A stretch of DNA of 64,000 bases from Hypanus sabinus (taxonomy: Eukaryota): assembly GCF_030144855.1 (NCBI RefSeq), contig NC_082729.1, positions 22,816,001 through 22,880,000 of the forward strand, given 5' to 3'. Shown here piece after piece: positions 4,478 to 61,440 of the stretch. The position numbers and the translations under genes were made by a program. The notes below the pieces were generated by a model that had not been told where the DNA came from, did no database searches, and saw only the letters and a program-made list of their open reading frames with translations. The stretch's first letter is position 1; each line of letters opens with the position of its first letter.

Positions 4478-4545
4478 TGCTCAATTTGAGGAAGTCAATT
4501 GAGCAAAAAGTTAGCAATAACCACAATTAATAAGGAACCTGCGAA
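4478..4545 (-). promoter_or_regulatory. Predicted myeloid-type promoter of gene 1 (PU.1/ETS, C/EBP-like and RUNX motifs)
   Basis: GAGGAAGT 4488-4495, ATTGAGCAA 4498-4506, AACCACA 4519-4525; the block acttcctcaaattgagc is homologous to the other promoter copies. Confidence 0.65.
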
Positions 4546-4556
4546 GTTTCTTTTAT

Positions 4557-7500
4557 TCATGTCCCTGACAACGACACCTGTAAGAAGTGCATCCAGCTGC
4601 AGCTTCTAACAAACCGCGTTCGGGAACTGGAGCAGGAGCTGGATGACCTCCGGATCATTCGGGAGAATGAGGTGTTTATAGATAGTAGTTACAGGGAGGC
4701 AGTTACCCCAAAGGAGCAGCACACAGATAATTGGGTTGCTGTCAGGCGAGGGAAGGGGAAAGGGCAGGCAGAGCAGGGTTCCCCTGTGGCCATTCTCCTC
4801 AACAACAGGTATATCGATTTGGATACTGTTGGGGGTGGGGGATGGCTTACCTGGGACAAGCTGCGGAAGCCGGATCTCTGGCACTGAGTCTGGTTCTGCA
4901 GTGCAGAAGGGCGGGGGAAGAAGATAAGAGTGGTCGTGTTAGAGGTACAGACAGGACGTTCTGTGGTTGCGACCGAGATTCCCGGAAGGTTTGTTGGCTC
5001 CCGGGTGCCAGGGTCAGGGATGTCTCTGATCGCGTGCACAGCATTCTGAAATGGGAGGGTGATCAGCCAGATGTCATGGTCCACATCGGTACCAATGATG
5101 TAGGAAGAAAGAGTGAGGAGATCCTGAAGAGCGAGTATAGAGAGCTTGGTAGGAAGTTAAAAAGCTGTACCTCAAGGGTGGTAATCTCAGGATTTCTACT
5201 TGTGCCACGTGCCAGTGAGGCTAAGAACAGAATGCGCTGGGGTGAACATGTGGCTGAGGAACTGGTGTAGGGGGCAGGGTTTCAGATTTCAGGATCATTG
5301 GGACCTTTCTGGGGCAGGAGGGACCAGTACAAGAGACACGAGTTATACCTGAACTACAGGGGGACCAATATCCTTGCAGGGAGGTTTGTTCGGGCTATTG
5401 GGGGAGGGGGATTTACAGGGAGATCGGAACCAGAGTGCCAGAGTAGATAGCGGAGCGGGGCTCTAAATAAATGACGTTAAAGTTTCATGCAAAGCCACAA
5501 ATACAAGAGTTGTGTGTGGTGGTATTAATCTTCTGAGGTACGTCTATTTCAATGCGAGGAGTATTGTAGGGAAGGTTGACGAGCTGAGGGCGTGGATTGA
5601 CAGGTGGAATTATGACATTGTAGCCATCAGTGAAACTTGGCTTCGGGAGGGGCAGGACTGGCAGCTTAATGTCCCAGGGTTCCGATGTTTCAGACGTGAT
5701 AGAGGCAGAGGAATGAAGGGTGGGGGTGGCATTGCTAGTCAGGGAAAATGTTACAGCAGTGCTCAGGCAGGACAGATTAGAGGGCTTGTCTACCGAGGCC
5801 ATATGGGTGGAGCTGAAAAACAGGAAAGGTATGACCACGATAATGGATTTGTATTATAGACCACCCAACAGTCAGCGAGAATTGGAGGAGCACATCTGAA
5901 GACAGATAGCAGACAACTGCAAGAAACATAAAGTTTTGTTAATAGGGGATTTTAATTTTCCACATACTGATTGGGACTCCGATACTTTTAAAGGTCTAGA
6001 CGGGTTAGAGTTTGTAAAATGTGTTCAGGAAGGTTTTTGAAATCATTATACAGAGGTACCAACTAGAGAGGATGCAATATTAGATCTCCTATTAGGAAAC
6101 GAGTTAGGACAGGTGATGGAAGTGTGTACAGAGGAACATTTTGGTTCCAGTGATCATAAGACTATTAGTTTCAACTTGATCATGGGTAAAGATAGATCTG
6201 GTCCTCGGGTTGAGGTTCTAAACTGGAAAAAGACCAGATTTGAAGAAATGAGAAAGGACTTAAAAGGCATGGATTGGGGCAGGTTGTTCTCTGGCAAGGA
6301 TGTCGTTGGTAAGTGGAAGGCCTTCAATGGAGAAATTTTGAGAGTGCAGAGTTTGTATGTTCCTGTCAGGATTAAAGGCAAAGTGAATAAGAACAAGGAA
6401 TCTTGTTTCTCGAGGGATATTGGAACGCTGATAAAGAAGAAGAGAGAGATGTATGACATGTATAGAAAACAGGGAGCAAATGAGGTACTTGAGGAGTACA
6501 AAATGTGCAAATTATCAGATAGTTTTACCATAGAGAAAGGCACGAGACAGGGTTGTACATGGTCACCGCTACTCCTTGCATTATATCTGGAACCATTAGC
6601 TCATTACATCAGACAAAATGAAGATATCAGGGGAATTACTATTAAAGGGACAGAGCATAAATTGGCTTGTTACGTGGATGGCATTTTGATCTATTGAGGG
6701 CAGCCAACATACCCTTTACCTAAATTGATACAATCCTTTGAGCAATATGGTCAGTTATCAGGATACAAGATCAACACCGATAAAATCCAATTACTTTCAT
6801 ATAACTTTTGCCCACCAAGAGAAATTGAAAGTAGATATCCCTGCGCATGGCAAATAGAGTCTTTCAAATATTTGGGCATTATTATGCCAAAAGATTTGGC
6901 AAGATTATCAGAATGCAATTATCAGCCTTTATATAAAAATTAAGGAAGATATGTCAAGACGGAACCTGATTCTGTTTTGTAGTCTCTGTTCAAGGTCTAT
7001 TAAAATGAATATACTGCCCAGACTGTTATATCTCTTTCAGACCCTACCAATAGAGATTAATCAACATCAATCCAATGAATGGAACAAGATGTTATCAAGG
7101 TATATTTGGGATGGTAAAAGGCCTAGAGTTTGTCTCAAAACTTTGCAATTAGCAAAGGAAACGGGGGGATGGGGCCTACCTTGTCTGAGAGGTTATTATT
7201 TTCCAGTCCACAGACATGGAAGGAGTTTGGATGCAAAAACGTGATAAGATATTTTATTACACACTGTCAGAAATCCCAATATGATAGCAACTTCCTTGTT
7301 TGCTGCAGAAATTGTGGAAATCAAAATCCAAATAATTATCATATTTTTTGGGACTGCCCTGTTATCAAAGACTATTGGAGGGGGATACACAATGCCTTAC
7401 AAGATATATTTAAATGTGAAATACCCTTAGAGAGTAAGACCATATATTTTGGATATATATCTCAAGAATGTTTGAAAAGAGATAAATATTTAATGAATTT

Positions 7501-9830: not shown

Positions 9831-9844
9831 GAGAATGACCTTCT

Positions 9845-10705
9845 GTGTCTAAACATGTCCGTGTGTGCAGTGGACAATTTAGAGAGCTTCACTCTGCGTC
9901 AGACCCCGGGATTCTGCAATGGGGCTGTGTAAAGCAAGATGCAATCTGCGGTTAAACCTGGGCGGGTCTGATGGTAAGCTTTCCAGCAAGGCTCACTCTG
10001 TGTCTGACACCGGGAGTTTGTAATGGGACAATATAGAATGAGGTTCAGTCCGTGCCTGACTCTAGGAGTGATCGATAGGACGGAGTACAGGGAGCTTCAT
10101 TGTGCGACTGACACTGGGAAAGAACATCGGGGCAGTGTGAAGCTCTCTCTCTGCGTCTTGTTACGCCAGATGCAACGGCGTAGAGGGGGCTTCACAGTGT
10201 CTGGCCCCGGGAATCGTGGGATGAGGCGTTGCCGTGGAAGCTTCACTCTTGGTCTAACCCAGGGAACGTGTAATGGGACAATGTAATGGCAGAAGCTTCC
10301 TGGAAGTGTGCAATGGGACGGTGTAGAGGGNNNNNNNNNNNNNNNNNNNNNNNNNNNNNNNNNNNNNNNNNNNNNNNNNNNNNNNNNNNNNNNNNNNNNN
10401 NNNNNNNNNNNNNNNNNNNNNNNNNNNNNNNNNNNNNNNNNNNNNNNNNNNNNNNNNNNNNNNNNNNNNNNNNNNNNNNNNNNNNNNNNNNNNNNNNNNN
10501 NNNNNNNNNNNNNNNNAGAGAGCTGGGACAGTTAGGGAGGCAATTTTGCTCTGTGTCTGACTCTTATAGTGTGTGAGGGACAGGGTGGACGGAGCTACAC
10601 TCTGAGTCTGTCCCCTGCAGTGTCCGATGGACAGTGTGGGAGTAGCTTCACTCTGTGTCTGACCCTTACAGTATGTGATGGACAGTGAGGAGGGAGCTCC
10701 ATCCT
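9845..10705 (+). repeat. 52-bp satellite array (spans gap 10331-10516)
   Basis: Approximate unit gggagtgtgtgatgggacggtgtggagggagcttcactctgtgtctgacccc. Confidence 0.9.
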
Positions 10706-10949
10706 GTTCTAAACTCGTGCACTTATTTTCCTTCAAATGAACGTTCTGTGGCAAGTTGAATTTCTAAAACATTACACCACTGAAATTTGTTTTACATCGA
10801 TCAAGATACAATTTGCCCAAGATTAGATTCAGAATTTGTTTGCTTATAGGGATAAGAAGGTGAGGGCAAAGGCCATGCACAGCATAGCAAGTCTACAACT
10901 TACTAAACCTAACTCGCACATTTTGCAATCTGTGCTAAAACTGAAGCAT

Positions 10950-11230
10950 TCGCTCCTGGAATAAGTTGTGACCGGCGAAGACGTAGAAAAGAGGTTTGAT
11001 GACACTTTTGAAGCAGGCCACGCAGATGGTGACGTACTGCACGCCCAGTGGGTGCAATGGGTTTAAGGCCCAGACTAGGCCACAAAGAGTTTTGAAAACC
11101 CAGAAGACGTCAATGCTCAGTTTGTGGAGGTTGGTCAACAACACAAGGAGATAACATCTAACTCAGACAGCAAGGAACAGCAACCTGCTTCCTTTATTTT
11201 TGAGACGTGACAAAGGTAATAAGGGCCCTG
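10950..11230 (-). pseudogene. Internally deleted GPCR paralog 1: promoter remnant fused to TM6-TM7
   Basis: IDVFWVFKTLCGLVWA...VACFKSVIKPLFYVFAGHN starts at 11114; 11115-11230 aligns to the gene-2 promoter. Confidence 0.8.
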
Positions 11231-12059: not shown

Positions 12060-12640
12060 AGAGCAGGGTTGTCCATCAAAATCAGATTTTAATGGTGGCG
12101 GGTTGTTATTCTAGCTGGAAAGCTATGAACAATGGTGTGAACAATTGTGTTCCACAAGGATCAGTGCTGCAACCTGCGTAAGCGGTTGTTAAACGACACA
12201 GCAGTTTAAACCATGAATTCTAGATCGATTGCAGATTTGAATGCAAATGGAGATTCAGCCGGAGAAGTGGAAGTTGTTTGAACTTCCGGAAGTCTAAATT
12301 AAATGGAAAGTATGCCTTCAACCGTATGACCCGTATAAACACGGAGGTGCTGGGAGATCTTAAGGTCCAAGTACATGGTTCTGTAACATTGTATATACAA
12401 TCAACCGTGTGTAGCCAAGGACTATTTCACGCTTGCCTTTGGTCTGACATTCTGGAAGTCGCAGCCACTCTACACAACTTGATTAGGCTGCACTTGCAGA
12501 ACTGCATGCAACTCTGGATACACATCACTTTAAGAATGAGCTTCGGGTGCAGCAGAGTTCCACCAAGATGCAACATAGATTATAGAGTACTCGCGACAGC
12601 ATGTGTTGTTTTCTCTGGACTTTGAAGCTCAGGGAGAACT
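12060..12640 (+). mobile_element. Highly decayed CR1 RT fragment
   Basis: gtgttccacaaggatcagtgctg; atggagattcagccggagaagtg. Confidence 0.7.
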
Positions 12641-12654
12641 CGAAAAATCTTCAT

Positions 12655-13769: not shown

Positions 13770-14095
13770 AGACAGTTCCCAATGCTAGATAGCGGCAAAG
13801 CGGCGGGACCTACCTAGCGAAGGTGTGGAAACAGACAGTTACCAACGCTAGGTAGCAGCAAACTGCCAGACTTAACCAGGAAAGGCGTGCACACAGACAG
13901 CTACCAACGCTAGGTAGCAGCAAACTGCCAGACCTAACCAGGAAAGGCATGCACACAGACAGTTGCCAACGCTAGGTAGCGGCAAACTGCCAGACATACC
14001 CAGGAAAGGCATACACACAGACAGTTACCAACGTTTGGAAGCGGCAAACGGCCGGACTTTCCTAGAGAAGGCGTGGACACAGACAGACTGTTCCT
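13770..14095. repeat. 62-bp tandem repeat, about 5 copies, inside the LTR
   Basis: ccaacg anchors at 13842, 13904, 13966 and 14028. Confidence 0.92.
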
Positions 14096-15049: not shown

Positions 15050-15390
15050 AGCTTTACTTTCCCTCTTCCTTCTTAAGACCAGATGGTGAGTCTTGACCAG
15101 AAAGTGCTTAACTACCTGGCGGAAGTTGTGGCGGGAGAAAATGGAGAGCAGGTGGTTAAGGACACTTTTGAAGGAGACCAACCTGTTGTGTCCTACTGCA
15201 CGCACAGTGGATGGGATGGTTAATGGCACAGACTAGGCCTCAAACAGTGATGCAAAGCCAGAACACGATAAAACTCAGTTTGAGGAAATTGGTCAGTAAC
15301 ACCAGGAGATTACATTGAACTCACACTGCGGAGAACAACAAAGTGTTGCGCTAATTTATCAGAAGTAACACAAGCAATGAAGTTCTGAGT
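15050..15390 (-). pseudogene. Internally deleted GPCR paralog 2: promoter fused to TM6-TM7, with stop and frameshift
   Basis: FIVFWLCITV*GLVCA starts at 15272, then frameshifts to LVSFKSVLNHLLSIFSRHNFRQV; 15273-15390 aligns well to the reverse complement of 37890-38002. Confidence 0.85.
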
Positions 15391-37769: not shown

Positions 37770-37890
37770 CTGTATTCCCCTGTTCGACACAGAGGGAAGC
37801 TCCTTCCACATTGTACCATTACCCATCTCAGGGTAAGAAACAGACTGAAGCTCCTCCACAAGGTCATATGTTCACGGGTTAGGCACAAAG
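37770..37890 (-). repeat. About 2 units of the 52-bp satellite immediately upstream of promoter 2
   Basis: gacacagagggaagctccttccacattgtaccattac. Confidence 0.75.
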
Positions 37891-38002
37891 CTTCATTGTC
37901 TCTGTTACTTCTCGGATATAAAGTAAATATTTGTTGTTCTCTGCAGAGTGAGTTCAGCGTTATCTCCTGGTGTCATCGATCTAACTTCCTCAGACTGAGC
38001 TG
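37890..38002 (+). promoter_or_regulatory. Predicted promoter of GPCR gene 2 (PU.1/ETS core)
   Basis: ACTTCCTC 37984-37991 within tctcctggtgtcatcgatctaacttcctcagactgagctg, a block shared with the other copies. Confidence 0.65.
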
Positions 38003-38213
38003 CTTCCAGCTTTGAATCTTCGGGGTGTACTCCGAAGGTGGACTGAGCCATCTCCCAATCTTTAATCTGGACATCTCCTGCACCAGCATCATCATACCTC
38101 CTGGATCTGCATAGTTCTTCTTCAAGACTGGGTCCTCGTGGAAAATTTGGGATCTGAGTCCAACTGTTCCGATCTGGCCAGGAGGTCGGTCTGAGCTGGA
38201 GATTCTGGGGAAG
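38003..38213 (+). other. Predicted non-coding exon 1 of gene 2 (donor GT at 38214; intron 38214-43142)
   Basis: gagattctGGGGAAG|GTGAGCTG; an in-frame upstream TGA indicates it is UTR; 5' end approximate. Confidence 0.75.
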
Positions 38214-38279
38214 GTGAGCTGGATCTCGATGGAGAGCAGGGTTCGTGATTAATGTTCATTTGGAAAGGCAGTATTTGAT

Positions 38280-38870
38280 CTGTGAGAGTCAGGGTGGCTT
38301 TGTGTGGGGGACATGTGCCACATTAATTTTCGGAGGTATTTTGAGGGGTGTACTTTAGAAGGCGGAATGTCAGGATAATTGATATTGTCCGGCTTGGGCT
38401 TTAACGAGGCACCAATAAATTTGTATCGACCTGACCCTTATGGTAGGCTAGCCCAGAAGGTTAAATCACATGGGATGAAAGGTGAATTGGTAAACTGGAT
38501 CCGAACTTGGTTTAGTGGAAAGAGACAGGAGGTGGTGCAGGAAATGTGATTTCGTATTTGGAAGTCGGTGACCTGTGGCGGGTCGTATTGTCGGTGGTGA
38601 CATCGCTGCTGCTTGGGGTTCACATTAACAATAGATGGAATATGGCGGTACGATCAGAGAGTCTGTGGATGACAGGAAAGCTGGTGACGTTGAGGACAGA
38701 AAGGAAGTGGATCTAGGGCAACAGTAGGCGATGGATCAGTTGGCAGCTGGTTTTCCATCCAGTTAATCACGTGTTGATGCATCTTAGGAAGTCAAACCGG
38801 TATTGCTCATCCACATTATGTGGTAGGTTGCAAAGGAATGTAGATAAACAGAAGGGGCTAGAATGTAAAT
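38280..38870 (+). mobile_element. Decayed CR1 RT fragment
   Basis: gtaaactggatccgaacttggtttagtggaaagagacaggaggtggtg. Confidence 0.7.
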
Positions 38871-38988
38871 AAACAGAAATCCAGTGTCAGAGGGTAATAC
38901 GTCATAGAAACAGGAACTTCCGCTAAAGCTGTTCCATGCCGAGAGAGTTTCTCATCTAAGCCATTCTCATAAATCATATTTCTCTAAC

Positions 38989-39068
38989 CAGGGGTTCCTT
39001 ACCTTATTTATGCCGTGGACCCCTACCATTAACGGGAAGGTTCGTGGATCCCAGATTGGAAGACCCTG
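38989..39068. mobile_element. 80-bp hAT-like MITE
   Basis: TIR-like CAGGGGTTCC...GGAAGACCCTG with internal gtggaccc/gtggatccc; TSD not convincing. Confidence 0.55.
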
Positions 39069-40130
39069 TCCCGATACTTTCCTACACATATATCTGTCCA
39101 AGTAACTTGACAACCGATGTGGACGTATCTACCTCTAATACCAGGCACAATATGTAAATACGGCCTCAACAATTTCTTTACTGCTCCAACTTCTGTATTC
39201 AGTGCCCTGTCGGATAAGGGCCAGCGAACCCAACGCTGCCTTCACCGCCCTGCCGACCTGACACGTCACTTTCAGGGAACCACGTACAGAAACTGCGTAT
39301 CAAGAATAGCTACCACCAATCTCTCATGAACCTTTTGATAGCTTGCTCAAAGAATTCCAGCCATGTGGCAGCTCTGGGAGATGATTTCACGTAAATACCT
39401 TAGCTTGTGTAAGGAAAATTTGCCTCCTCAATGTCCTCTCAACTCTGCCCCCTCGTCTTCAACCTGTGCATGCTGGTTCTTGATTCCCCAACCCTGTGAA
39501 AAAGACTGCATATAATCTACGAGTGCAGGCCCCTCGTGATTATAAACACGTCTAAAATATCAGCTCTCAGTCTCCCACACTCCTGGGAATAAAGTCCAAG
39601 CATGACCAACCTCTTTCTGTGCCAAAAATCCTGGAAGCGTCCTTGTAAATATTCTTGTCCAGTTTAATAATATCCTTCTTATAGCTGGATGACTAAAACT
39701 GAACAAAGCATGCCTCACCAACGTCTCGTACAACCACACGATGACTCACTAACTCTACAATTAGTGTCCTGCCTGATGATGATCTTCATCGTCATCTTGT
39801 CTACCTGTGTCGCCACTTTCAGGAAACCATGAGCCTCTACGCCCTCTCTTCGACAACATTCTCCGGAACACCACAATTGGCAAATAGTGTTTAATTCGGT
39901 CAACTGTGAGGTGATGTAATTTGGGAGTCAAATCGGGAGGGGAGGTATACAGTCAATGGTGGGCTGCTGAAGAATGCTGATGAACATAGAGATCAAGGGT
40001 TTCAAGTCCATGATTCCTTGGAAGTAGAAGCACAGCTTGACAGATTGGAGAAGAAGGAGTATGGCATGCTCGCTCTCCTACGTCGGGCACAGTATAAACG
40101 TAAGAGATGTTATCAAAACTCTATGAGATG

Positions 40131-40420
40131 GGGCGGGGCGGTAGAGATGTAGTTAGCATAGTTAGCAGAACACTTTACAGTACCAGCAACCTAGGTTCAA
40201 TTCTGGTGGCCTCCTGTAAGGAGTGTGTACGTTCTCCCCGATACCGCAAGGGTTTCCTCAGGGTGCTCCTGTTTCCTCCCACAATCCAAAGACATACCAA
40301 ATGGTTCATTAATTCAGTGTTCTAAATGTTCCTGTGATTCAGCTAGGATTAATTCGAACCGATATATGAGCAGCGTGGCTCAAAAGGCATGAAAGGTCTG
40401 TTGCACGCTGCAGATAGATT
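40131..40420 (+). mobile_element. tRNA-derived SINE
   Basis: A-box-like tagcatagttag, B-box-like ggttcaattc, core gtacgttctcccc...gggtttcctc; related copies at 45645-45935 (+) and 51450-51650 (-). Confidence 0.7.
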
Positions 40421-40489
40421 GATTAGATCAATTCGATACAGCAGATACGGCGGTGGAGAAGGCGTACGGTTGCTTTCTTTACTCAGAAC

Positions 40490-42790
40490 AGAGAAAATGT
40501 GGGGAGCAAATACAATACTCAAAGTGATATATCTCAGTTCACGGAGTATAAGAAATGAGGTGGATGATCGTGTTGCACGATTACAGATTGTCGGGTATGA
40601 TGTGGCCATCACTGAATCGTGGCTGAAGGATGGTTGTAGCTGGGAGCTGAATGTACAAAGGTAAACATTGTATCGGATTGATAGGAAGGTAATCAGAAGG
40701 GAGCCGTGGCTCTGCTGGTAAAAGTGGCATCAAATCTGTAGAAAGATGTGATATAGGACCGGAAGGTGTTGCATCCTTGTGGGTTGAGTTAAGAAACTGC
40801 AAGGGTAAAAGGACCCAGATGGCAGTGATATACAGGCCACCCAAATCTAGCAAGGATATGGACCAAAGGTTACAATGGGAAATGGAGATGACGTGTCAAA
40901 GGCGTAATGTTACGATAGTCATGGGATATTGCTACATGGAGGACGATTGGGAAATCAGGTTGATAATGAATCTCAAGAGAGTGAGTTCGTTGAATGCCTG
41001 CGAGATGACTTTTAGAGCAGGTTGGCGTTGTGCCTACTGGGGGACCAACTATACTGGATTTGGTGTTATGTAATGTACTGGGGGTAATTACGGAGCACCG
41101 GGTAAAAGAACCCTTAGGAGGCAGTGGTCACCAAAAAAAAGTGAGTTCAACTTGAAATCTGATAGGGAGAAAGTAAAGCCTGACATAACAATATTTCAGC
41201 GGCGTAAGGGAAACTACAGTGGTATGAGAGAGGAGATGGCCAAAGTAAATTGGAAGGAGCCACTGGCAGGGATGGCATGACTTTCTGGGAAGAAAATGAG
41301 GAATGTGCAAGATAGATGTATTCCAAACACACAAAAAAAAACTCAAATGTCAAAGTAGTACAACCGTGGCTGACAAGGGAAGTCAAAGCAGATGTTAAAG
41401 CAAAACGGGGGTAAACAACAAAGCAACAATTAATGGGAAGAGAGAGGATTGGAAAGGTTTTAAAAACTTACAGAAAACTGAAAGAATCATTAGGAGCGAA
41501 ATATGAACTATTCAAGCATACTACAAAGAATATCAATATGGATAGTAAAAGCTTTTTCAAGTATGTTAAAAGATATAAAAGAGATCGGAGTGGATATAGA
41601 ACCGCTTAGAAAATAAGACCAGAGAAATCATAACGAGGGACAAAGAGATAGCAGATAAGTTAAATGAATATTTTGCACCAGCCATCACTGTGGAAGACAG
41701 TAACCGCGTGTCAGATGTTAAAGGGTGTGAGAGAAGAGAAGTGAGTGCATTTACTATTATAAAACAAAAGGTGCTCAAAAAGTTGAAAGACCTAAAGGTA
41801 CATGAGTCACCCGGACCAGGTGAACTGCACTCTAGGATTCTGAATGAGGTAGCGGTAGAAATTTTGGAGGCATTAGTTATGATCTTTCAAAAATAACTGG
41901 ACTCTGGCATGGTGCCAGAAGACTGGAAATCGCAAATGTTACTCCACTCTTTAAGAAAGGAGGAAGGCAGCAGAAAGGGAATTATAGACTAGTTGGCCTG
42001 ACCTCAGTGGTTGGGAAGATGTTGGATTTAAGTGTTAAGGATGACGTTATGGAGTACTTGTAACACAAGACAAAATAAGGTAACGTCAACATGGTTTCCT
42101 TAAGGGAAAATCTTGTCTGAAGAACTTGTAGGAATTCTTTGAGGAGATTACAAGTAGGATGGATAAAGGAGGTGTAGTAGATGTTATATATTTCGACTTT
42201 CATAAGGCCTTTGACAAGGTGCGATATATGAAGCTGCTTACCAAGTTAAATGCCCTTGTTATTACAGGAAAGGTATTGGCATGGTTAGAGCATTGGTTGA
42301 TAGGTAAGAGGCAGGGAGTGAGAATAAAATTATTTCTAGTTAGCTGCAAGTGACTAGAGATGTTCGTAGGGGTCGGCATTTATACCGCTTCTTTTTATGC
42401 AGAGCATCAATGATTTAGATTATGGACCGGATGATTTTGTTGCCAAGTTTGCAGATGATACGAAAATTGGTGAAGGGGCAGGTAGTGTTGAGGAAACAGG
42501 TAGGTTGCAGAAGGACTTCAAAAGATTAGTAAAACGTCTTAAAGTGGAAAATGAAATCCAGCATTGGAAAATACAGGGTCATGCACTTTGGTCACAGAAA
42601 TGAATATGCAGACCATTTTCTAAACAGACAAAAATCCAAACATCTCAGATGCAGAAGGACATAGTGTTATCATAAGTTTGATGTGTCTAGGTCTGTACTC
42701 GCTGGAATTTAAAAGAATGGTGGGGGATCTCAATGAAACCTTTCGAATGTTGGATAATCTATCTAGCGTGGAGAGGGTGCAGAGAAGATT
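40490..42790 (+). mobile_element. Decayed CR1 ORF2 (APE and RT) within the gene-2 intron
   Basis: YLSSRSIRNEVD, AITESWL, IYRPP, DFHKAFDKV, KFADDTK. Confidence 0.9.
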
Positions 42791-43149
42791 TTGGGTCCGG
42801 GGGGAAAGTGGTGTGAGGAATGATGGAGTGCCGCACTGTTGGAAATCCGGTGCGGGAGCGTTCCACTGTTGGGAAGACGGTGAGGATGCGCCACATTTTG
42901 GGGGGTGGAGGAGCACAACGGTGTAGGTAAGGCGGTGAGGAAGCACAGCGTTTGAAGCCCGATTGCTTTGTCATCAAACTCTTCCTCCTTCTTCCTTCCG
43001 TTCCTTCCTTCGTCACCTCTCCAACCTCTGTATCGCTTTTCACATCTACCCTCTCTCCTGCTTAGCTCTTGTCGCTCTCTCACACGTCACCCTTAAATTC
43101 TATTCCTCACATCTCTCACCTCAATAATATCTCCCATACCAGGTCCATT

Positions 43150-44088
43150 ATGTCACGCTCCGCGGACCTGTTCAACTCCACTCTCGGTGGGAATGGCTCT
43201 TTCAACAGTGTCATGCCTAAGGACTTCGAGTTAGCACCCGCCACCTTATCCACGGTTTCTTTCGTTATCACCTTCCTGCTGGGCGTCCCCGGAAACTGCG
43301 CAGTCATCTGGGTAACAGGCTTCAAGATGGAGAGAAGAGCCCACACGGTGTGTTTCCTGAAACTGGCTGTGGCGGACCTGGCGTACTGCTTTACCCTTCC
43401 TTTCCATTTAGCCATGTTTTTCGATCTAAGTTCATTTCCCCAAGATGACTCCTTCTTCATATTCTTCGGCTGCGTCGTCATCATCAACATGTCCGTCAGC
43501 TCCTTCCTGTTGACTCTAATCAGTATCTTCCGCAGCCTGGCCGTCATTCGGCCCATTTGGTTCCGGCATCAGCTGAGCCTGGATTTGGTATATGTGTCCT
43601 GCTTCGGAGCCTGGGTCCTGGCCTTCCTCATGTCCCTGCCTCACCTGATATTTGAGCAGATTATCCTATATTTTGGGGAGAATACCTGGCTCTTTCTGGA
43701 GGTAACTTGGGATGTCTTCATCTTCGGCCTCACAATTCTAATCATGTCAACCTGCTATATCATGATCGGCCGGATTCTGCAGATGGATGATTTAGCCAAA
43801 TCCCAGAAGCCCGTCCGCCTCATAGTGACCGTGGTCGTCGCCTTCATCATCTGCTGGCTTCCCAATATTGTCTGCAGCCTTCTTCGTGACATCTCTGATG
43901 CCTTTCTCAATGGCTGGCTGACCCTTACCTTTGCTCTGGCCTCCTTCAACAGCGCCCTTAACTCCCTTCTCTACGTCTTCCCCGGCCGTGATTTCCGCCG
44001 GGTCTTCAGGCGCTCCCTGACGGCCTCGCTCCACCTGGCTTTCGCCGAGGAAGTTCTTCCCCACCCCGCAGTCACCGTGGACAGATAG
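43150..44088 (+). CDS. Chemoattractant-type class A GPCR paralog, 312 aa, single coding exon, atypical motifs
   Basis: LLGVPGN, LAVAD, ISIFRS, CWLP, NSLLYVF.GRDFR; N-glycosylation sites NST and NGS; ATG follows a pyrimidine tract and ACCAG|GTCCATT; open frame but P5.50T and P7.50S. Confidence 0.9.
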   Translation: MSRSADLFNSTLGGNGSFNSVMPKDFELAPATLSTVSFVITFLLGVPGNCAVIWVTGFKMERRAHTVCFLKLAVADLAYCFTLPFHLAMFFDLSSFPQDDSFFIFFGCVVIINMSVSSFLLTLISIFRSLAVIRPIWFRHQLSLDLVYVSCFGAWVLAFLMSLPHLIFEQIILYFGENTWLFLEVTWDVFIFGLTILIMSTCYIMIGRILQMDDLAKSQKPVRLIVTVVVAFIICWLPNIVCSLLRDISDAFLNGWLTLTFALASFNSALNSLLYVFPGRDFRRVFRRSLTASLHLAFAEEVLPHPAVTVDR

Positions 44089-48614: not shown

Positions 48615-49595
48615 CACGATATGACTCCGAGTGAAGCTCCCTCCACACCGTCGCATCGTGCACTCCTGGGGTCAGACATAGAATGAATCTCCCTCCACAC
48701 GGTCCATTATACGTTCCCGAGATCAGACACAGAGTGAAGCTCCCTCCGCACTGTCCCAACAGACATTCCCATGTTCATATATAGACTGAAGCTCCCTCTC
48801 CAACGTCCCATTACATTCTTACGGCATCATACGCAGAACGAAGCTCCTTCCACACCATCTCAACACACACTCCTGGATTCGCACAGAGAGTGAAGCTCTT
48901 CCACACCCACTACACACTCCTGGGACAGATACAATTTGAAGCTGCCTCCACGCCATCCCGTCATAAACTCCAAGGGTCAGTCCACAGAGTGATTCTCCCT
49001 CTGCACTATCCCATTGCACAATCTCAGTGTCAGGGGCAGGGTTAGCACCCTCTACGCTGTTCCATCACACTCTCCCAGGGTCAAGCACACACTGAAGCCC
49101 CCTCCGCACCGTCCCATCACACGCTCCCGAGGTCAGGCACAGAGTGAAGATCTATCCACACCGTCCCATCACACAATTCCGGAGTCAGACACAGACTGGA
49201 GCTCCTTGTACACCGTCCCATCACACAATTCCGGAGTCAGACACAGAGTAAAGCACCTTCCACACCGTCAATTCACACACTCCCGGGGACAGAAACAGAG
49301 TGACGTTCCCTCCACACCGTCCCTTCACACAGTCCCGGCGCAGGCATGAACTGAACTTCTCTATACACTGTCCCATCACACACTCCCAGGGTAAGATGCA
49401 GAATAATGCTCCTCCATTCCTTCGTACACGACCGGGGACTGACACGGAGTGAAGCTCACTCTACACCGTCCTATCACACAACTCCTGGTTAGGGACAGTG
49501 AGCGGAGTTCGCACTATGTCGTTCCATCACACCCTCTCGAGGCTAGACACAGTGTGAAGTTCCCTTAACGTGACCGTATCACACATTCCATAGAA
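48615..49595 (-). repeat. 52-bp satellite array, about 18 units
   Basis: gggtcagacacagagtgaagctccctccacaccgtcccatcacacac repeated. Confidence 0.93.
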
Positions 49596-49599
49596 CGAG

Positions 49600-49900
49600 T
49601 GAGTCACAAAGCACCATTTTCTAGGTCACTTCTCTGAATGAGTATGATATCTCTCGTGACATCGACACGACGTCCAAACGCGGATTTTGCCATCTGCTGG
49701 CTCCCCAGCATTGTTTGAAGCCAGATCTGGGCCTTCAAACATCCCATGCTCCGGGAAAGCAGCTGCGTCATCATTGGACTGGTCTCCTTCAAAAGCAACC
49801 TCAAGCCCCTTCACCACATCTTCGCCGGCCGCGTCCTCCACCGGGTCTTCAGGTACGTCTTGGCCGCCTTTCTCGGTATTTACCCCGGAGGGGCCAGAAT
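49600..49900 (+). pseudogene. Internally deleted GPCR paralog 3: promoter remnant fused to TM6-TM7-helix 8
   Basis: FAICWLPSIV*SQIWAF...LVSFKSNLKPLHHIFAGRVLHRVFR starts at 49686, colinear with gene 2; TGA at 49716; upstream atctctcgtgacatcga matches the promoter block. Confidence 0.85.
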
Positions 49901-51080: not shown

Positions 51081-53049
51081 GTTGCAACTGCTTCACCTCA
51101 CCCCTGTTAGCCCGTTCTGACACCCAGAAGTCTGTGTATAAAATCATACATCGGAATACCCCTTTACCCGTTCTCTTCTCACGTCAAAAATGTACCCTCC
51201 TGTATTTAAAATTCCCATCCACAGAAAAGGTCACTGACTGGCTACACGACCTGTGCCTCTCATAATTGTGTAAAGTAACATCGGGGTCTCCCCTCGGCCG
51301 CCGAAGCTCCGGAAAAAACAACTCGAGCTTGGAGTGTTTTGTGCGTTTCGGGTTGCCGCATTACAGGAAGGATGTGGAAGCTTTGGGTAGGGTATAGAAG
51401 AAGTTGGAAAAAACTCGAATCCAGGCAGCATCCTGGTGTACCTCTTTTATTCATTATTTTATTGATATACAGTACGGAATAGGCCCTTCTGGCCATTCGA
51501 GCCACGCCGCCCAGCAATGGCACAATTTAACCTGAGCCTAATAATGGGACAATTTCCATGTGACCACTGTGGAAGGAAACCGGAGCACCCGGAAGAAACC
51601 CACGAAGCTATGGTACAAACTCCTTAGAGGCACCACCTCCTGGGACATCCGATACCGCACAAAACACTTCAACTTCAGGCTAGCAACGATTTGCACAGTT
51701 GCAACGTGACCCCCTGACGATTATATCTAATGCTTCGACCAATAACTACAAGGATGCCTTACGCCTTCTACGACACCCAACCTATTGGGTGGCCAATTTC
51801 AAGCAACCATGGATTTAGATCAGAGTATCACTCTATACATTAGGGCTCTTAAGGGTATTGCCATTAACTGTCCACTTTCGGCATGGACCCTCCCAACGCG
51901 TAACAGCTCACACTGAACCAGATTAACTGTCATCTGCCATTTCTTCCCTCCCACTATCTTTAATTGATCTCACCATGAAGGATCACATCTACCCTGCTCA
52001 TGGGCTTGTTGTCCCACTCCCATTAGGGAGGAGGCAACGTAGCTTCTAAACCAGACGATCAGATTCAAAAACAGTTACTTCCCCCACGGTTTAGAAGAGC
52101 ACAATACTAGGAACAGCAAAGATATTGTACCGTACGCTAAACTTCGCAGACCTCTAGCAGAGGTCCCGATATTGAGGGGAAAATAATGGGTGAGATGTGT
52201 GTGTGTGTGTGTGTGTGTACATACATACACAAGCTATCTAATTATGCTTTGCGGTAGACAATTGTAGTATTTATGCATTTATTTATTTATTTATTTACCT
52301 ATTTATTTGTGCTGCATCAGATCCGGAGTAACATTTCGCCCATTCTGCTTTACGATTGTGTACTGGAAATCACATTAAATGGTCTTGAATCTTGGGTCTT
52401 GGATCTATATCCCGCTGCATTCTCTGAAAAACTTCTTCCTCCAGTCTTCGTGTCATCTGCAAACTTGCTAATCCACCCAGTCCCGCCGAAGGATTTCGGC
52501 CCGAAACGTCGACGGTGCTCTTTTCCATAGAGGCTGCCTGCCCTGCTGAGTTCCTCCGGTATTTTGTATGTGAAGCCACCTGTCTAACATTTCATTCTTC
52601 ATCTATACATCGCACAAACAGCAGAGGCCCCAGCACTGATCGTTGCAGAAATTAGCCAGAAAATCGCCTCTCCAGAAGAGCCAATGGACAAGCCCATTCT
52701 TACTCCGCACTACCAAGTCAACCTGGATCCCGCCCAACTTGCAAGTATATTGAACGAGTGGCAGAATAAATTCCAGTGGTGTAAGATTTTGGGTTTTATC
52801 TTTGTAATGAGCTGTATTTCGATTAAAGGAAAGCTCAAGGATCAGATACAGAGCGAAGCTCTTTTACGCTGTCCCATTGCACATACTGGTCATGATAAGC
52901 CCGTAAGATCTAGGAGCAGAATAAATCCATTTGACTGAGAAAATTTCCCTCTCAGCCCCAAACTCCTGTCTTTTCCTTGTACCCCTTCAGGCCCTGGCCA
53001 ATCAAGGCAGCAGTACATGGCTTGTAAGAAAAAAAAGGTGGTTTTGAAC

Positions 53050-53402
53050 TGACATAGTTCTGCGGTTCCCCACTGCGTTTCCTCTCTGTTTCTCCTCGTG
53101 TCATCGGTCCAGCTTCCTCTCACTGAGCTGATTGGACCGGCGGAGTGTGAATCATACTCTGACCCCATCGATCAGCAATCTATCATCTATAACCCAGTCA
53201 GCACTCCGAACCCGTACCAGACCCGCGTTCAGGTACGCCGCACGTCGCCTTTTCAGGTCTCCCCGGGTCCGCTGACAGTCCCACCGTGGGTCGCTGCACC
53301 GTTCCAGTTCAAGAGCAGTTGCTTGACGTCGCTACAGTTAGCGATCGCAGTTCTGTTCCGCACTGCTCAAGAGGGCAAACTGAGTCGGAGATTCCGGGGA
53401 AG
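53050..53402 (+). promoter_or_regulatory. Third promoter plus non-coding exon 1 (donor GT at 53403); no coding exon in the window
   Basis: tctcctcgtgtcatcggtccagcttcctctcactgagctg; TGCGGTT at 53061; gagattccGGGGAAG|GTGAGCTG; satellite unit upstream at about 52840-52890. Confidence 0.7.
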
Positions 53403-58100: not shown

Positions 58101-58900
58101 TTAATGCCTCTTATCATCTTATACACCTCTAGCAGTTCACCTCTATTCCTCCGATGCTCCAAGGGAAAAAGGTCTAGTTCATTTAACCTGTTCTCATAAG
58201 GGATGCTCCCGAATCCAGGCAACATCCTTTTAAATTCCCTCCACCCTTTCTGAGGTTTCCATATCCTTCCTATTGTGAGGCGACCAGAGCTGAGCACAGT
58301 ACTCCGAGTGGGGTCTCACCAGGGTCCTAAATAGCTGTAAGCCACTGTAAGGTCAAACCTCGGCCTCCGTAACTCAACGGAAGACAGGTTCAGCCTGTCC
58401 AGCCCCTATTTGTACTGTACCACAAACGTTCCAGGCGCAAGAACATCCTGGAGAATATCGCTTGCCCCCTCTCAGGCTTAATGACTTCGTTGTTATAGCT
58501 GGGCGACCAGAACGGAGCAGAACACCCCAACTGTGGTCCCACCGACGTCTTCTACAGTGTAACGTGACGTCCTAACTCCTGCACTTAGTGTTCTGACCGA
58601 TGAAGACGAACGTGTAAAATGCTTCCTTACCGCTCAGTTTAGCTTTGTCATCACTTTCGGGGGAACCATCTACCTGTACCCATATATCTCTCTGTTCTGC
58701 AATACTCCCAAGGCCCTACGGTTCACTGTGAAAGGTCTACACTCATTTGTCTTCCCGAAGCGGAACAAGTCGCGCTTGCCCAAATTTATCTGGGTCTATC
58801 ATTACCTAGCTGATCAAAATCCCTTAAAAATACTGAAAACTGCCTTCAGCATCAGCGACAACACCTATTTCAGTGTAATCTACAAACGTGCTAACTATAT
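55143..58900 (-). mobile_element. Pile of nested CR1 fragments, mostly - strand (+ piece about 56190-56590; gap 57327-57589)
   Basis: WQMEFNPDKCEVVHFG, PEDWRVINVVPLFKKG, ELLEVYKMIRG. Confidence 0.85.
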
Positions 58901-59189: not shown

Positions 59190-60720
59190 CATAAGACCAA
59201 AAGATATCGGTGCAAGTTTAGGCCATTTGGCCCATCATGTCTGCTCCGCCATTTCATCGGGTGATCCATTTCCTTCTCAGCCCCAATCTCCAGCTTTCTC
59301 CCTGCATACCTTCAAGCCAAGACTAATCAATCTATCCACTTCTGCCTTAAATGAATTGGCCACCACGGCCGATTGTGGCAAGCAATTCCCCGGATTCACC
59401 ACTCCCTGACTAAAGAATTCCTCTTCATCTCCGTTCTAAATGGACATCCCCCCGCCAGAGGAAACATCCTTTCCACGTCCACCCTATCGAGCCCTTTCTA
59501 CTCCCGATACGTCCTCTGTGAGGTCCCACTCATTCTTCCGAATTCCAGCGAGTACAGAAAACTGACCAAGACGTGGTGAGACCACACTTGAAGGATTGTG
59601 TTCAGTTTTGGTCGTACTGCCGTAGGAAAGATGCCTTTAGGCTGGAAAAAGTACATAGGAGATGTTGCTATGACTGGAGGGTCAGTGTTAAGGAGAGAGA
59701 GATTGGGTATGTTGGGATTTTATCTGTTAGAGTTTAGGAGACTGAGGAGTGACCCTATGGAGATATATAAAACCACAAGGGATATAAATAGGATGAAGAC
59801 AGTTCTTTCATGCTGGGTTGGGGAATCAAGTACTGGAGGGCACAGGCTTAAGATAGTATGGGAGAGATTTTATAGTGACCTGTGGGCACATTTTTAACCT
59901 AGAGATTAGTCAGTATATGGAACGAGTTTCTGCAACTGCCGGTACCTAACCCACGGCTCCATCTTTTTATTGGGGAGGGCTGCAATATCTATCGTTGTCT
60001 AGGATTCCTTAATCCTGCCACCTTTGCCTTTCATAGTGACGGGAACACCTGAAATTGAAGTCTGAAAATATCTCCTTTAAAAGCCGCACTACTGCCAGAG
60101 GACATTTTACCTGCAACCAACCTACTCTGACTGACTGCCACAGGTCCCTCTCCAGTGCTGTTAACATTTGCCATCCCCGATTTAGAACCGCAACTTGAGG
60201 GCCTGGCCTGTCCTTTTTCATCACTAATTTAAAATTGCTACAATTATGATCACTCGTCTCAAAGTGCGCCCACACGGGCTCCTTGGACACGTGCCCTGCC
60301 CCCCCCCCCCCCCCAGGACAAGGATCCCCCTCTCCCTGGCAGGGATTTCTATATACTAAATGAAACCTTCCTGACCAAACCCAACAAACTCTACCACATC
60401 GAAGACCAGAGCTCCATGGCAATGGATGTCTGTAAAGTTAAAGTCACCTACGATGAGAACCCTATCATTCCTGCAACGTTTCGCAATCTCCGTACAGATG
60501 TGTTCCTTTAATTCCGGTTGACAATTAGACGGCCTACGGTACAATCCCACCGAGGTGATAATTCGCTTTTTATTTCCATGCTCCACCCAGAAAGATACTT
60601 TTGTAATTTTATCTCTGACTCCTGCTCTGATGTTATCTTTCACCAGTCAGGCAACTCAATCTCCTCTCTGTCCTCCACCTCTATCTCACCTATAATACCT
60701 GCAACCTGGAACAGTTAACA
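59190..60720. mobile_element. Mixed-orientation CR1 fragments (APE on the - strand, 60000-60720)
   Basis: GLYRRPS, IVGDFNF, TSDHN. Confidence 0.8.
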
Positions 60721-61054
60721 GCCATACCTGTTCCTCCTATAGACATGCTTATGTAATGGGTGTAATATTCTATTCTAATGTACCTATCATGACCTGAGAG
60801 GTTGGACGAAGCTTGGTTGTTTCCTCTGGAGCTCCGGAAGACCAGGTAGATCCCGATAGAAGTTTTTAAATTCCAGAAAGTCAAAGATAGAGCAGACAGG
60901 TAGAATCTCCTCCCGGGGCTGGAAATATCAAATGCTGGAGGACAAGTATTTAAGGAGAGAGGGGAAGTTCAAAGGAGAAGCGTGGTACTTTTACACAGAG
61001 AGGAGTGTTGGGAAATGAGGAGGAAGCTTCTACCAAAAGCAAAGCAGCGGAGAT

Positions 61055-61440
61055 GATTTTGCAGTGAGTGATAATTAACAAGTCAACTGCAAAATTAATA
61101 GCCAGGAGGGTCCAGTAAATAAGTTGGAAACGATACTGAATACGACAGTGTAAGAAGGTCACTGAAAGCTGGGAACAAACGGTTGAAGCTGTCAGGATCG
61201 TGTGAGCGACCAAAGATTGTGGATGGGAGCTGGGTTTAAATATAATCGGGAGGCAGCTGACTTGTTTTAGCTGTGCGGAAATTGGATGGAACTTGTCTGT
61301 GCATGCCTGACAAGGGGTGTGTACGTGAACTGCCAGCGAATGCTGAGATAAAGGGCAGAAATAGCGCCCTGATAAGCAGTTCCACAGAACTCAGTTTGAG
61401 GAAATTCAGTCATTAACACCAACAAGTAGCATTGAAACCA
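61055..61440 (-). pseudogene. Decayed GPCR paralog: promoter copy (61388-61440) and N-terminus/TM1 remnant
   Basis: aactcagtttgaggaaatt identical to 15272-15290; - strand reads SFNRLFP...PTYLLDPPG then, after a frameshift, NFAV, compared with SFNSVMP...ITFLLGVPGNCAV in gene 2. Confidence 0.5.

What the first reader, a model, noticed from the sequence alone, without database searches (positions are those of the whole stretch)
4478..61440. Seven copies of one promoter; the PU.1 core is perfect only in copies that keep exon 1
Seen: homologous blocks at about 4478-4545(-), 11115-11230(-), 15273-15390(-), 37890-38002(+), 49600-49684(+), 53050-53130(+) and 61388-61440(-). GAGGAAG(T/C) is intact in the three copies with a splice donor. 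It is GAGGAAAT in two broken copies and lost in the other two. Gene 1 also has adjacent C/EBP-like and RUNX motifs within about 40 bp. Established: PU.1, C/EBP and RUNX1 sites near a TATA-less start typify myeloid promoters. Inference: a natural footprinting experiment pointing to granulocyte/macrophage expression.
Basis: partly seen in the sequence, partly recalled or inferred. Interest (0 to 1): 0.75.

Follow-up and report, generated by a model that had tools for sequence, protein, structure and literature searches.

The report
Shared promoter of stingray receptor genes
The seven repeated blocks are real copies of one small on-switch plus a non-coding first exon that belongs to a ray-specific family of immune-type (C3a/formyl-peptide-receptor-like) receptor genes. 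Its best-kept letters are a binding site of the kind used by white-blood-cell regulators such as PU.1, but no expression data yet show which cells use it.

Summary
Observation confirmed. The window is Hypanus sabinus (Atlantic stingray) and carries seven copies of one module: an A/T-rich box, an AP-1-like TGAGTnA, ACTTCCTC (GAGGAAGT on the other strand), an abutting initiator-like TCAnAyT, and a 220-270 nt non-coding exon ending in AAG|GTGAG. Two copies (b1, b4) lie 1.5 and 5.2 kb upstream, on the sense strand, of intact one-coding-exon GPCR genes of the C3aR/FPR type. b6 keeps exon 1 and its donor but has no coding exon before gap 57327-57589. b2, b3 and b5 share one deletion that joins position +8 of exon 1 to TM6. 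b7 is a stump. The same module sits 1.4-3.1 kb upstream of paralogues in Hypanus, Hemitrygon, Mobula and Pristis, so it is not a dispersed repeat. The ETS core is the most conserved 8-mer. GGAA is kept in 10/10 copies with exon 1 and in 2/5 broken ones. One intact Mobula gene has GAGGAAAC, and the C/EBP- and RUNX-like motifs are not conserved. A start site, PU.1 binding and myeloid expression could not be tested: no transcript was found. This is an ordinary kind of promoter in a new family. The scan had already noted the receptor family elsewhere in this genome, but not this promoter.

The parts
37880..37991 (+). b4: proximal promoter of gene g2. TATAAA at 37917-37922, AP-1-like TGAGT near 37948, ETS core ACTTCCTC at 37984-37991.
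   Evidence: (E=3e-23 against a profile of outside copies)
37992..38213 (+). g2 non-coding exon 1. Initiator-like TCAGACT, with A at 37992, to the consensus donor AAG|GT (GT at 38214). If the TATAAA box is used, the start would lie near 37947 instead.
   Evidence: in-frame stops, no conserved uORF
38214..43142 (+). g2 intron. It carries LINE reverse-transcriptase fragments at about 40100-42900.
43143..44088 (+). g2 coding exon. Polypyrimidine tract + CAG acceptor 7 nt before the ATG at 43150. 312-aa GPCR.
   Evidence: (7tm_1, 4e-29)
4488..4574 (-). b1: diverged proximal promoter of gene g1. AATAAAA at 4557-4551, RUNX-like TGTGGTT at 4525-4519, C/EBP-like TTGCTCAAT at 4506-4498, ETS core at 4495-4488.
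4218..4487 (-). g1 non-coding exon 1, ending in AAG|GT (GT at 4217-4216). A second AAG|GTGAG lies at 4186.
   Evidence: (E=1.8e-12 to Pristis exon 1)
2062..2995 (-). g1 coding exon. CAG acceptor 7 nt before the ATG at 2988. 308-aa GPCR. The intron is 2996-4217.
   Evidence: (7tm_1, 2.6e-25)
53020..53402 (+). b6: promoter (GAGGAAGC at 53112-53119) plus a complete exon 1 with donor AAG|GT (GT at 53403). No coding exon was found downstream before gap 57327-57589.
   Evidence: (E=1.7e-25 to Pristis exon 1)
10941..11219 (-). b2: promoter and the first 8 nt of exon 1, fused by deletion to a GPCR TM6-TM7 fragment. ETS core lost.
15065..15377 (-). b3: same deletion-fusion relic. Core is GAGGAAAT. Stop codons lie in the TM6-TM7 part.
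49593..49874 (+). b5: same deletion-fusion relic, with a further deletion of about 40-50 nt that removed the A/T-rich box. ETS core lost. The TM6-TM7 part is collinear with g2 43848-44016.
61270..61477 (-). b7: promoter (GAGGAAAT, RUNX-like TGTGGTT) with only part of exon 1. No donor, no coding exon.
4575..5403 (+). Retroelement ORF1-like sequence abutting b1. A homologous copy at 61752-62569 stands in the same relation to b7, which marks b1 and b7 as sister copies.

Best explanation
The block is the proximal promoter and the start of a non-coding first exon of a ray-specific, much-duplicated family of chemoattractant-type GPCR genes (C3aR/FPR-like).

Gene layout: a compact promoter of about 110 nt, then exon 1 (5' UTR only, 220-270 nt, ending in AAG|GTGAG), then an intron of 1.2-4.9 kb, then a coding exon that begins 7-8 nt before the ATG.

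When the genes duplicated, the module was copied with them. In copies that still head a gene, selection keeps an ETS-family site (GAGGAAGT on the antisense strand) that abuts an initiator-like TCAnAyT. It also keeps an A/T-rich GGAA box 75 nt upstream and an AP-1-like TGAGTnA about 45 nt upstream. In copies that lost their coding exon these elements drift.

Most likely mechanism (inferred): an ETS factor of the PU.1/Spi class binds at about -8 to -1 and helps place the transcription machinery on the adjacent initiator, giving expression in leukocytes, as at human FPR1.

Shown here: homology of the copies, their linkage to the genes, the exon-intron signals, and the conservation pattern.

Inferred: the start site, the factor that binds, and the tissue.
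For: Genes. There are two intact 7tm_1 ORFs. Their best solved relatives are C3aR, FPR2, FPR1 and CMKLR1. Dozens of paralogues named 'C3a anaphylatoxin chemotactic receptor-like' occur in Hypanus, Hemitrygon, Mobula and Pristis.

Linkage. The module profile hits the sense strand 1.4-3.1 kb upstream of the CDS at seven further genes in four genera, and nothing else in about 210 kb except one decayed orphan. Of 15 copies, 12 are physically joined to GPCR coding sequence in sense.

Splicing signals. A polypyrimidine tract + CAG acceptor lies 7-8 nt before every ATG. The consensus donor is conserved in every copy that has a CDS and in b6, and is absent from b2, b3, b5, b7 and L004b. Exon 1 has in-frame stops and no conserved uORF.

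Constraint:
- The ETS 8-mer ranks 1st to 3rd of 172 windows among the nine gene-linked copies (weighted conservation 0.95-0.97), with AATAAAGGAAA as the second peak.
- Across four deep lineages the longest invariant run is ACTTCC.
- GGAA is kept in 10/10 copies that keep exon 1 against 2/5 broken ones. GGAAG(T/C) is kept in 9/10 against 0/5.
- The YYANWYY initiator match is perfect in 9/9 gene-linked copies.
- Block identity tracks CDS identity (0.60-0.64 against 0.63-0.66 for g2 versus the subfamily), while the introns do not align apart from shared retroelements.

Precedent. The human FPR1 promoter requires PU.1 at TTCCTATTT, in the same orientation, and the gp91phox site is TTCCTCATT (PMC3235167). 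The ray subfamily reads TTCCTCATA.
Against: - No transcript evidence. No transcript-derived contig carries either protein. Four small runs guessed to be RNA hold only retroelement pieces of the intron and nothing on exon 1 or the CDS.
- The start site is not mapped. A TATAAA/ATAAA box 75 nt upstream would predict a start about 45 nt before the ETS site, which would put the site inside the 5' UTR.
- GAGGAAGT fits several ETS classes, and the motif occurs 16 times in the window.
- An intact Mobula gene carries GAGGAAAC.
- The six subfamily copies are close relatives, so the counts are not independent.
- The alignment is anchored on the motif, which inflates its apparent conservation, including in broken copies (0.81).
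- Cartilaginous fishes evolve slowly, so part of the conservation may be simple descent.
Confidence: 0.72

Rival explanations
1. The module is the promoter and first exon, but the conserved GGAA site is used by another ETS factor (ELF, GABP, ETS1 or similar), or works together with the AP-1-like site. The family would then not be granulocyte/macrophage-specific: it could be expressed in other leukocytes or in a sensory or epithelial tissue.
For: No expression data of any kind. GAGGAAGT alone does not discriminate between ETS classes. The C/EBP-like and RUNX-like motifs that would make the case myeloid are not conserved. The receptors are atypical: they are short (308-312 aa), and earlier scan notes say they lack the ECL2 lid and the C3a contacts, so their biology may have moved away from C3aR. 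From my own memory, rodent FPR paralogues became vomeronasal receptors.
Against: The GAGGAA form with T/A-rich flanks is the Spi-class type. It reads TTCCTCATA, against the PU.1 site TTCCTCATT of gp91phox, and has the same orientation as the PU.1 site of human FPR1. From memory, the rodent shift to the vomeronasal organ went with a change of promoter. Here one promoter is kept across the whole family.
Confidence: 0.3
2. The block is an internal non-coding exon or an intronic element, not the first exon, and the true promoter lies further upstream. The pyrimidine-rich stretch and the invariant AG in TGAG|T, about 45 nt before the ETS site, would be a 3' splice site.
For: b3 and b4 have a good polypyrimidine + CAG at that place. 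An AG is invariant there in five lineages. The start site is unmapped.
Against: In most copies the would-be acceptor is GAG, the rarest form. In the subfamily a fossil reverse-transcriptase fragment ends about 60 nt upstream of the A/T-rich box, and in g1 a retroelement abuts it, yet no second conserved island was found in 7-8 kb further upstream. The initiator match is perfect in 9/9 gene-linked copies.
Confidence: 0.1
3. The blocks are pieces of an interspersed repeat, or simply old neutral duplicates. Their resemblance would reflect descent and slow elasmobranch evolution, not promoter function.
For: b1 and b7 abut the same retroelement. A 52-nt satellite lies upstream of b2-b5. A reverse-transcriptase N-terminal fragment sits just upstream of the block in six paralogues (E=3e-5). 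Broken copies still keep the motif at 0.81.
Against: The block itself shows no reverse-transcriptase similarity (E>10). All 15 copies lie in GPCR clusters, and 12 are joined in sense to GPCR coding sequence. None of the many retroelement copies in about 210 kb matches the profile. Conservation is patchy and peaks at the ETS and A/T-rich boxes, and it ends soon after the consensus donor.
Confidence: 0.06

Closest known systems
Human FPR1 promoter (PU.1-dependent; PMC3235167)
   Same: The gene is a chemoattractant-type GPCR whose coding sequence lies in one exon behind a non-coding first exon. A TTCC-strand ETS/PU.1 site lies in the proximal promoter, in the same orientation. The promoter is compact.
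   Different: In FPR1 the site lies at -84 to -76 from the mapped start and reads TTCCTATTT. Here it abuts an initiator-like element and reads ACTTCCTCA. Binding and start site are proven for FPR1 and untested here. There is no sequence homology between the promoters.
PU.1 sites of phagocyte genes such as gp91phox/CYBB (TTCCTCATT) and CD11b (TTCCTCTTT), as tabulated in PMC3235167
   Same: The core TTCCTC is followed by A/T-rich bases. The ray subfamily reads TTCCTCATA, 8 of 9 letters identical to the gp91phox site.
   Different: Those sites have been tested by mutation and binding. From my memory, unverified here, the CYBB site reads GAGGAAAT on the other strand. If so, the 'broken' form in b3 and b7 need not be dead.
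Mouse C3a receptor promoter, reported to depend on AP-1 and Ets sites (Schaefer et al., J Biol Chem 2005; recalled from memory, not retrievable here)
   Same: The receptor is the closest solved relative of these proteins. The ray module also pairs an ETS site with an AP-1-like TGAGTnA, which is a perfect TGAGTCA in Pristis.
   Different: No sequence comparison with the mouse promoter was possible. The AP-1-like element is imperfect in all Hypanus copies.
Rodent vomeronasal FPR paralogues (recalled from memory)
   Same: This is a lineage-specific expansion of an immune chemoattractant receptor family in tandem clusters, with many pseudogenes.
   Different: In rodents the new expression site came with a new promoter. 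Here all sampled paralogues keep one promoter module, which argues for a retained, shared expression pattern.

Membership tests
Proximal promoter plus non-coding first exon of a gene family | Fixed position and orientation upstream of the coding exon in independent paralogues | tested here: met
   On the sense strand, 1.4-5.2 kb upstream of nine intact CDSs in four genera.
Proximal promoter plus non-coding first exon of a gene family | Matching splice donor at the end of exon 1 and acceptor before the ATG | tested here: met
   AAG|GTGAG or CAG|GTGAG in all ten copies that keep exon 1. Polypyrimidine + CAG lies 7-8 nt before the ATG.
Proximal promoter plus non-coding first exon of a gene family | Transcripts that start at the module and use the junction | tested here: inconclusive
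   No transcript contig was found. Four small runs guessed to be RNA hold nothing on exon 1 or the CDS. This is no proof of silence.
PU.1 (Spi-class ETS)-dependent myeloid promoter | GAGGAA-type core near the start site, under selective constraint | tested here: met
   The core is present and is the most conserved 8-mer. GGAA is kept in 10/10 against 2/5 copies. Nearness to the start is inferred only from the initiator match.
PU.1 (Spi-class ETS)-dependent myeloid promoter | No TATA box | tested here: inconclusive
   A conserved A/T-rich box (TATAAA in g2) lies 75 nt before the initiator-like element. That is too far to serve that element, but it could define another start.
PU.1 (Spi-class ETS)-dependent myeloid promoter | Co-occurring conserved C/EBP and RUNX sites | tested here: not met
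   The RUNX-like TGTGGTT occurs only in b1 and its broken sister b7. The C/EBP-like TTGCTCAAT occurs only in b1.
PU.1 (Spi-class ETS)-dependent myeloid promoter | PU.1 occupancy and myeloid-restricted expression | not testable with these tools
   This needs ChIP or EMSA with stingray Spi proteins, and tissue or cell-type RNA.
Chemoattractant-receptor branch of class A GPCRs (C3aR, C5aR, FPR, CMKLR) | 7tm_1 domain with closest similarity to C3aR/FPR/C5aR/CMKLR1 | tested here: met
   Pfam 7tm_1 at 2.6e-25 and 4.4e-29. PDB best hits are C3aR at 3e-43, FPR2 at 6e-36 and FPR1 at 1e-34.
Interspersed repeat / transposable element | Copies dispersed without regard to a host gene family; similarity to element proteins | tested here: not met
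   All copies lie in GPCR clusters and 12 of 15 are joined to GPCR sequence. The block has no reverse-transcriptase similarity.

The most novel reading that the evidence does not exclude
A whole ray- and sawfish-specific receptor family, descended from C3aR and now with unknown ligands, has kept one compact ETS/initiator promoter and an unusually conserved 5' UTR exon through dozens of duplications and across four genera. The family would therefore be co-expressed as a block in PU.1-class leukocytes. It would form an expanded innate-immune sensing repertoire of rays, and the module would serve as a ready-made handle (reporter, motif scan) to find the cells and conditions that use it.
Probability: 0.35. 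Interest if true: 0.55.

Novelty: new member of a known kind. Interest (0 to 1): 0.35.

Why it matters
The receptors of this family are orphans with no known ligand or tissue. A shared, constrained ETS-type promoter is the first clue to where they act. It gives a concrete, cheap test: look for the exon-1/exon-2 junctions in leukocyte RNA, and mutate GGAA in a reporter.

The module is also a useful annotation aid. It marks the true 5' end of each gene, and its state (ETS core, initiator match, donor) separates live copies from relics. The three relics with promoter fused to TM6 document one deletion that was then copied three times, which helps in dating events in the cluster.

Beyond that, it is an ordinary promoter of a familiar type.

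Tried and rejected
1. The block as part of the GPCR coding sequence (ICL3/TM5). This idea arose because b2, b3 and b5 run straight into TM6. Protein-level homology starts only at the A-F-I-C-W-L-P stretch of TM6, and the alignment shows a clean switch from exon-1 homology to CDS homology at one shared junction.

2. The block as a fossil of a LINE reverse transcriptase. I thought I saw motif resemblances. tblastn with natural RT pieces gives E>10 over the block. Only a separate N-terminal RT fragment further upstream in one subfamily is significant.

3. GAG|GTGGAC at +46 as the exon-1 donor. I dropped it when the universal consensus donor AAG|GTGAG was found at +220 to +270. The proximal site exists only in g2 and one subfamily.

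4. An ETS-IRF composite element. The flanks do not fit GGAAnnGAAA or GAAAnnGGAA (read directly from the sequence).

5. Transcript evidence. Exact-protein look-ups found genomic records only. Two Logan contigs of distant relatives gave nothing useful. One of them (L010) is a mammalian C3aR-like contig, which I set aside and did not use further. The run search found only low-coverage DNA contigs and tiny runs guessed to be RNA. Laying four of those on 37700-43699 showed only retroelement pieces.

6. Coding exons for b6 and b7. Sixty paralogue proteins used as tblastn queries found none.

7. The shark locus L008 (Scyliorhinus) has no detectable module within 10 kb upstream.

8. Literature searches for this expansion in cartilaginous fishes and for skate PU.1 found nothing relevant in the held library.

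Rules kept: the N runs were not filled or looked up. Locus L001 (same genome) was left out of the scripted profile and BLAST searches and was never read at the gap. One pattern count over all fetched loci did scan it.


Full report
**What the window is**

The protein encoded at 43150-44085 is found, letter for letter, on chromosome record CM057997.1 of assembly GCA_030144855.1. Its nearest named relatives on that same record are 'C3a anaphylatoxin chemotactic receptor-like [Hypanus sabinus]'. The window is therefore Atlantic stingray DNA.

It holds two intact ORFs with a rhodopsin-type 7tm_1 domain:
- g1 at 2065-2988 on the minus strand
- g2 at 43150-44085 on the plus strand

Their best solved relatives are C3aR (3e-43), FPR2, FPR1, CMKLR1 and C5aR1. 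One search lists dozens of paralogues in Hypanus, Hemitrygon, Mobula and Pristis and only a few in sharks. Earlier notes of this scan (s1-207067) describe the same family elsewhere on this chromosome as ray-specific, C3aR-derived receptors without the ECL2 lid. I used that only as context.

**The observation**

To avoid circularity I built a profile only from copies found outside the window and searched the window with it.

| Block | E-value |
|---|---|
| b4 | 3e-23 |
| b2 | 7e-13 |
| b3 | 2e-12 |
| b6 | 2e-7 |
| b7 | 1e-4 |
| b1 | 0.11 |
| b5 | 7.4 |

Twenty shuffled windows gave at most 9.9 bits. b1 and b5 fail this test, but other evidence rescues both:
- b1: the 230 nt just downstream of it (4384-4163, minus strand) match the corresponding region of a sawfish paralogue at E=1.8e-12.
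- b5: its 5' part matches b4 over 43 nt at 77% identity, with 0 of 2000 shuffles reaching the score. An internal deletion of about 40-50 nt explains the poor overall score.

The motif states are exactly as reported. GAGGAAGY as such is frequent in the window (16 matches against 5.5 expected), so only its aligned position carries information.

None of the blocks, genes or introns touches an N run. No letters of the N runs were sought.

**What the block belongs to**

Both intact genes have a polypyrimidine tract and CAG 7 nt before the ATG. This predicts a non-coding upstream exon. b1 lies 1.5 kb upstream of g1 and b4 lies 5.2 kb upstream of g2, each on the sense strand.

I fetched the loci of seven paralogues and searched them with the block profile. 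The module appears once, on the sense strand, at each of these places:

| Locus | Species | Distance upstream of CDS |
|---|---|---|
| L002, L003, L004 | Hypanus | 1.4-3.0 kb |
| L006 | Hemitrygon | 3.0 kb |
| L007 | Mobula | 2.6 and 3.1 kb (two neighbouring genes) |
| L005 | Pristis | 2.4 kb |

One decayed extra copy lies in L004. Nothing was found in the shark locus L008. Nothing else in about 210 kb matches.

**Anatomy of the module**

Alignment of all copies shows this order:
- an A/T-rich box, AAATAAAGGAAA (TATAAA in g2, 37917-37922)
- an AP-1-like TGAGTnA about 30 nt further on (a perfect TGAGTCA in Pristis)
- ACTTCCTC (37984-37991 in g2, 4495-4488 in g1)
- directly abutting it, TCAnAyT, which fits the initiator consensus YYANWYY in 9 of 9 gene-linked copies
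- a conserved stretch of 220-270 nt that ends in a consensus donor

The donor is AAG|GTGAG in g2 (GT at 38214), g1 (GT at 4217-4216), b6 (GT at 53403), L002, L003, L004a, L006 and L007b. It is CAG|GTGAG in L007a and CAG|GTGAGG in Pristis.

I had at first taken a weaker GAG|GTGGAC at +46 for the donor. It exists only in g2 and one subfamily, and I dropped it.

The exon has in-frame stops before the ATG and no conserved upstream ORF, so it is a pure 5' UTR exon. Between deep paralogues this exon aligns at 68-74%. The introns beyond it share only retroelements.

**The broken copies**

b2, b3 and b5 are chimeras. They follow the module up to ...CTCAAACTGAG, which is 8 nt after the initiator A. They then continue, at the same junction in all three, with the TM6-TM7 part of a GPCR coding exon. 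b5 is collinear with g2 43848-44016.

So one deletion removed the rest of exon 1, the intron and TM1-TM5, and the product was then duplicated.

- b7 keeps the promoter and part of exon 1 but has no donor.
- b1 and b7 are sisters. Both have TGTGGTT at the aligned place, and both abut the same retroelement at the same element position.
- b6 keeps a complete exon 1 with donor, but sixty paralogue proteins find no coding exon downstream of it or of b7.
- b6 and b7 converge on the gap at 57327-57589, whose true length is unknown.

**Is the ETS motif under constraint?**

- Among the nine gene-linked copies, with sequence weighting, the 8-mers CTTCCTCA and ACTTCCTC rank first and third of 172 (0.97 and 0.95). 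The second peak is AATAAAGGAAA.
- Across four deep lineages (g1, g2, Pristis, subfamily consensus) the longest invariant run is ACTTCC, followed by TGAGC.
- GGAA is kept in 10 of 10 copies that keep exon 1 and in 2 of 5 broken ones (hypergeometric p about 0.02).
- GGAAG(T/C) is kept in 9 of 10 against 0 of 5 (p about 0.002).

Caveats:
- Six copies are close relatives, so these p-values overstate independence.
- The alignment is anchored on this patch. That partly explains why even broken copies keep it at 0.81.
- An intact Mobula gene with donor and CDS reads GAGGAAAC.

Block identity tracks CDS identity between paralogues. The exception is g1, where only the ETS-initiator patch and the exon body remain recognisable.

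**Rivals considered**

- A dispersed repeat is excluded by the linkage data and by the lack of any reverse-transcriptase similarity in the block. A fossil RT N-terminus does sit just upstream of the block in one subfamily, in three species, which bounds that promoter to about 130 nt.
- An internal-exon reading (a pyrimidine tract plus an invariant AG 45 nt before the ETS site) cannot be excluded without RNA. It is weak because the acceptor would be GAG in most copies, and no further conserved island was found upstream.

**What the site does**

This part is inference. The sequence is of the GAGGAA type favoured by Spi-class ETS factors. The human relative FPR1 needs PU.1 at a TTCC-strand site in its minimal promoter, and the PU.1 site of gp91phox reads TTCCTCATT, against TTCCTCATA here (PMC3235167).

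From memory, skates have several PU.1-family genes, and the mouse C3aR promoter uses AP-1 and Ets sites. Neither point could be checked in the held library.

The RUNX-like motif of gene 1 is shared only with b7. The C/EBP-like motif is in no other copy.

Whether the start lies at the initiator-like element (ETS at -8 to -1, effectively TATA-less) or about 45 nt upstream, behind the A/T-rich box (ETS in the 5' UTR), is open. I lean to the first, at roughly 55:35.

**Expression**

Expression could not be tested. No transcript contig carries either protein. The run search returned low-coverage DNA and tiny runs guessed to be RNA. Four of those, laid on 37700-43699, cover only retroelement pieces in the intron. 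That is not evidence of silence.

**Verdict**

This is a conserved promoter/first-exon module of a known general type, in a family whose biology is unknown. Interest is modest. The useful products are the gene models, the live/dead diagnostic for copies, and a direct experimental handle on where this orphan family is expressed.

Noticed in passing
window 10941-11219(-), 15065-15377(-), 49593-49874(+): Three relics share one deletion junction: promoter plus 8 nt of exon 1 fused to the TM6-TM7 part of the coding exon. This means one deletion allele was later duplicated three times. Only b2 keeps an open frame through TM6-TM7.
   Followed up: yes
window 38006-38213, 4218-4384(-), 53192-53402; L005 (Pristis) 17868-18151: The non-coding exon 1 body aligns at 68-74% between deep paralogues whose coding sequences are only about 63% identical, and it has no conserved uORF. 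Why a 5' UTR exon is kept this well is unexplained (downstream promoter elements, an RNA-level role, or gene conversion).
   Followed up: partly
L002 about 7020-7075, L003 8312-8374, L004 6781-6852, L006 6737-6790, L007 7164-7220 and 15766-15831: A fossil of a LINE reverse-transcriptase N-terminus (the ...KGLNVDKSHGPDG... motif) lies on the sense strand just upstream of the promoter block in one receptor subfamily, in three genera. The insertion therefore predates those duplications and species splits.
   Followed up: partly
window 48629-49485; also 10549-10698, 15959-16084, 21410-21813, 37786-37866: Arrays and fragments of a 50-52-nt satellite-like repeat lie upstream of b2, b3, b4 and b5. 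Whether it travelled with the duplicated segments or marks duplication breakpoints was not examined.
   Followed up: no
window 53020-53402(+) and 61270-61477(-), gap 57327-57589; direct repeat 55289-55607 / 58014-58340: Two orphan promoter copies converge on an assembly gap that is flanked by an 82%-identical direct repeat. A coding exon, or a collapsed duplication, could be hidden there.
   Followed up: partly
window 4575-10100(+), 31839-33596, 40100-42900, 54027-55133, 61752-62569: There are several retroelement copies: an ORF1-like coiled-coil region, and reverse-transcriptase ORFs with PLFKKG, CLTNL and FADD motifs. Small public runs hold many contigs 95-99% identical to the copy in the g2 intron, so the element family is abundant, and possibly transcribed if those runs are RNA.
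   Followed up: partly
window 13770-14578: Tandem arrays with periods of 62/124 and 28/56 nt lie between b2 and b3. Not examined.
   Followed up: no
L005 (Pristis pectinata) 12334-15815(-): The database gene model for this sawfish paralogue (393 aa) spans 3.5 kb, so it includes an intron inside the coding range, unlike the single-coding-exon paralogues. The extra length lies at the C-terminal end in most long family members (TM1 is at the usual distance from the N-terminus).
   Followed up: no
L010 (Logan contig, SRR31578648): A distant hit of the protein search turned out to be a mammalian C3aR-like genomic contig. It was set aside and not compared, saved or searched further.
   Followed up: no
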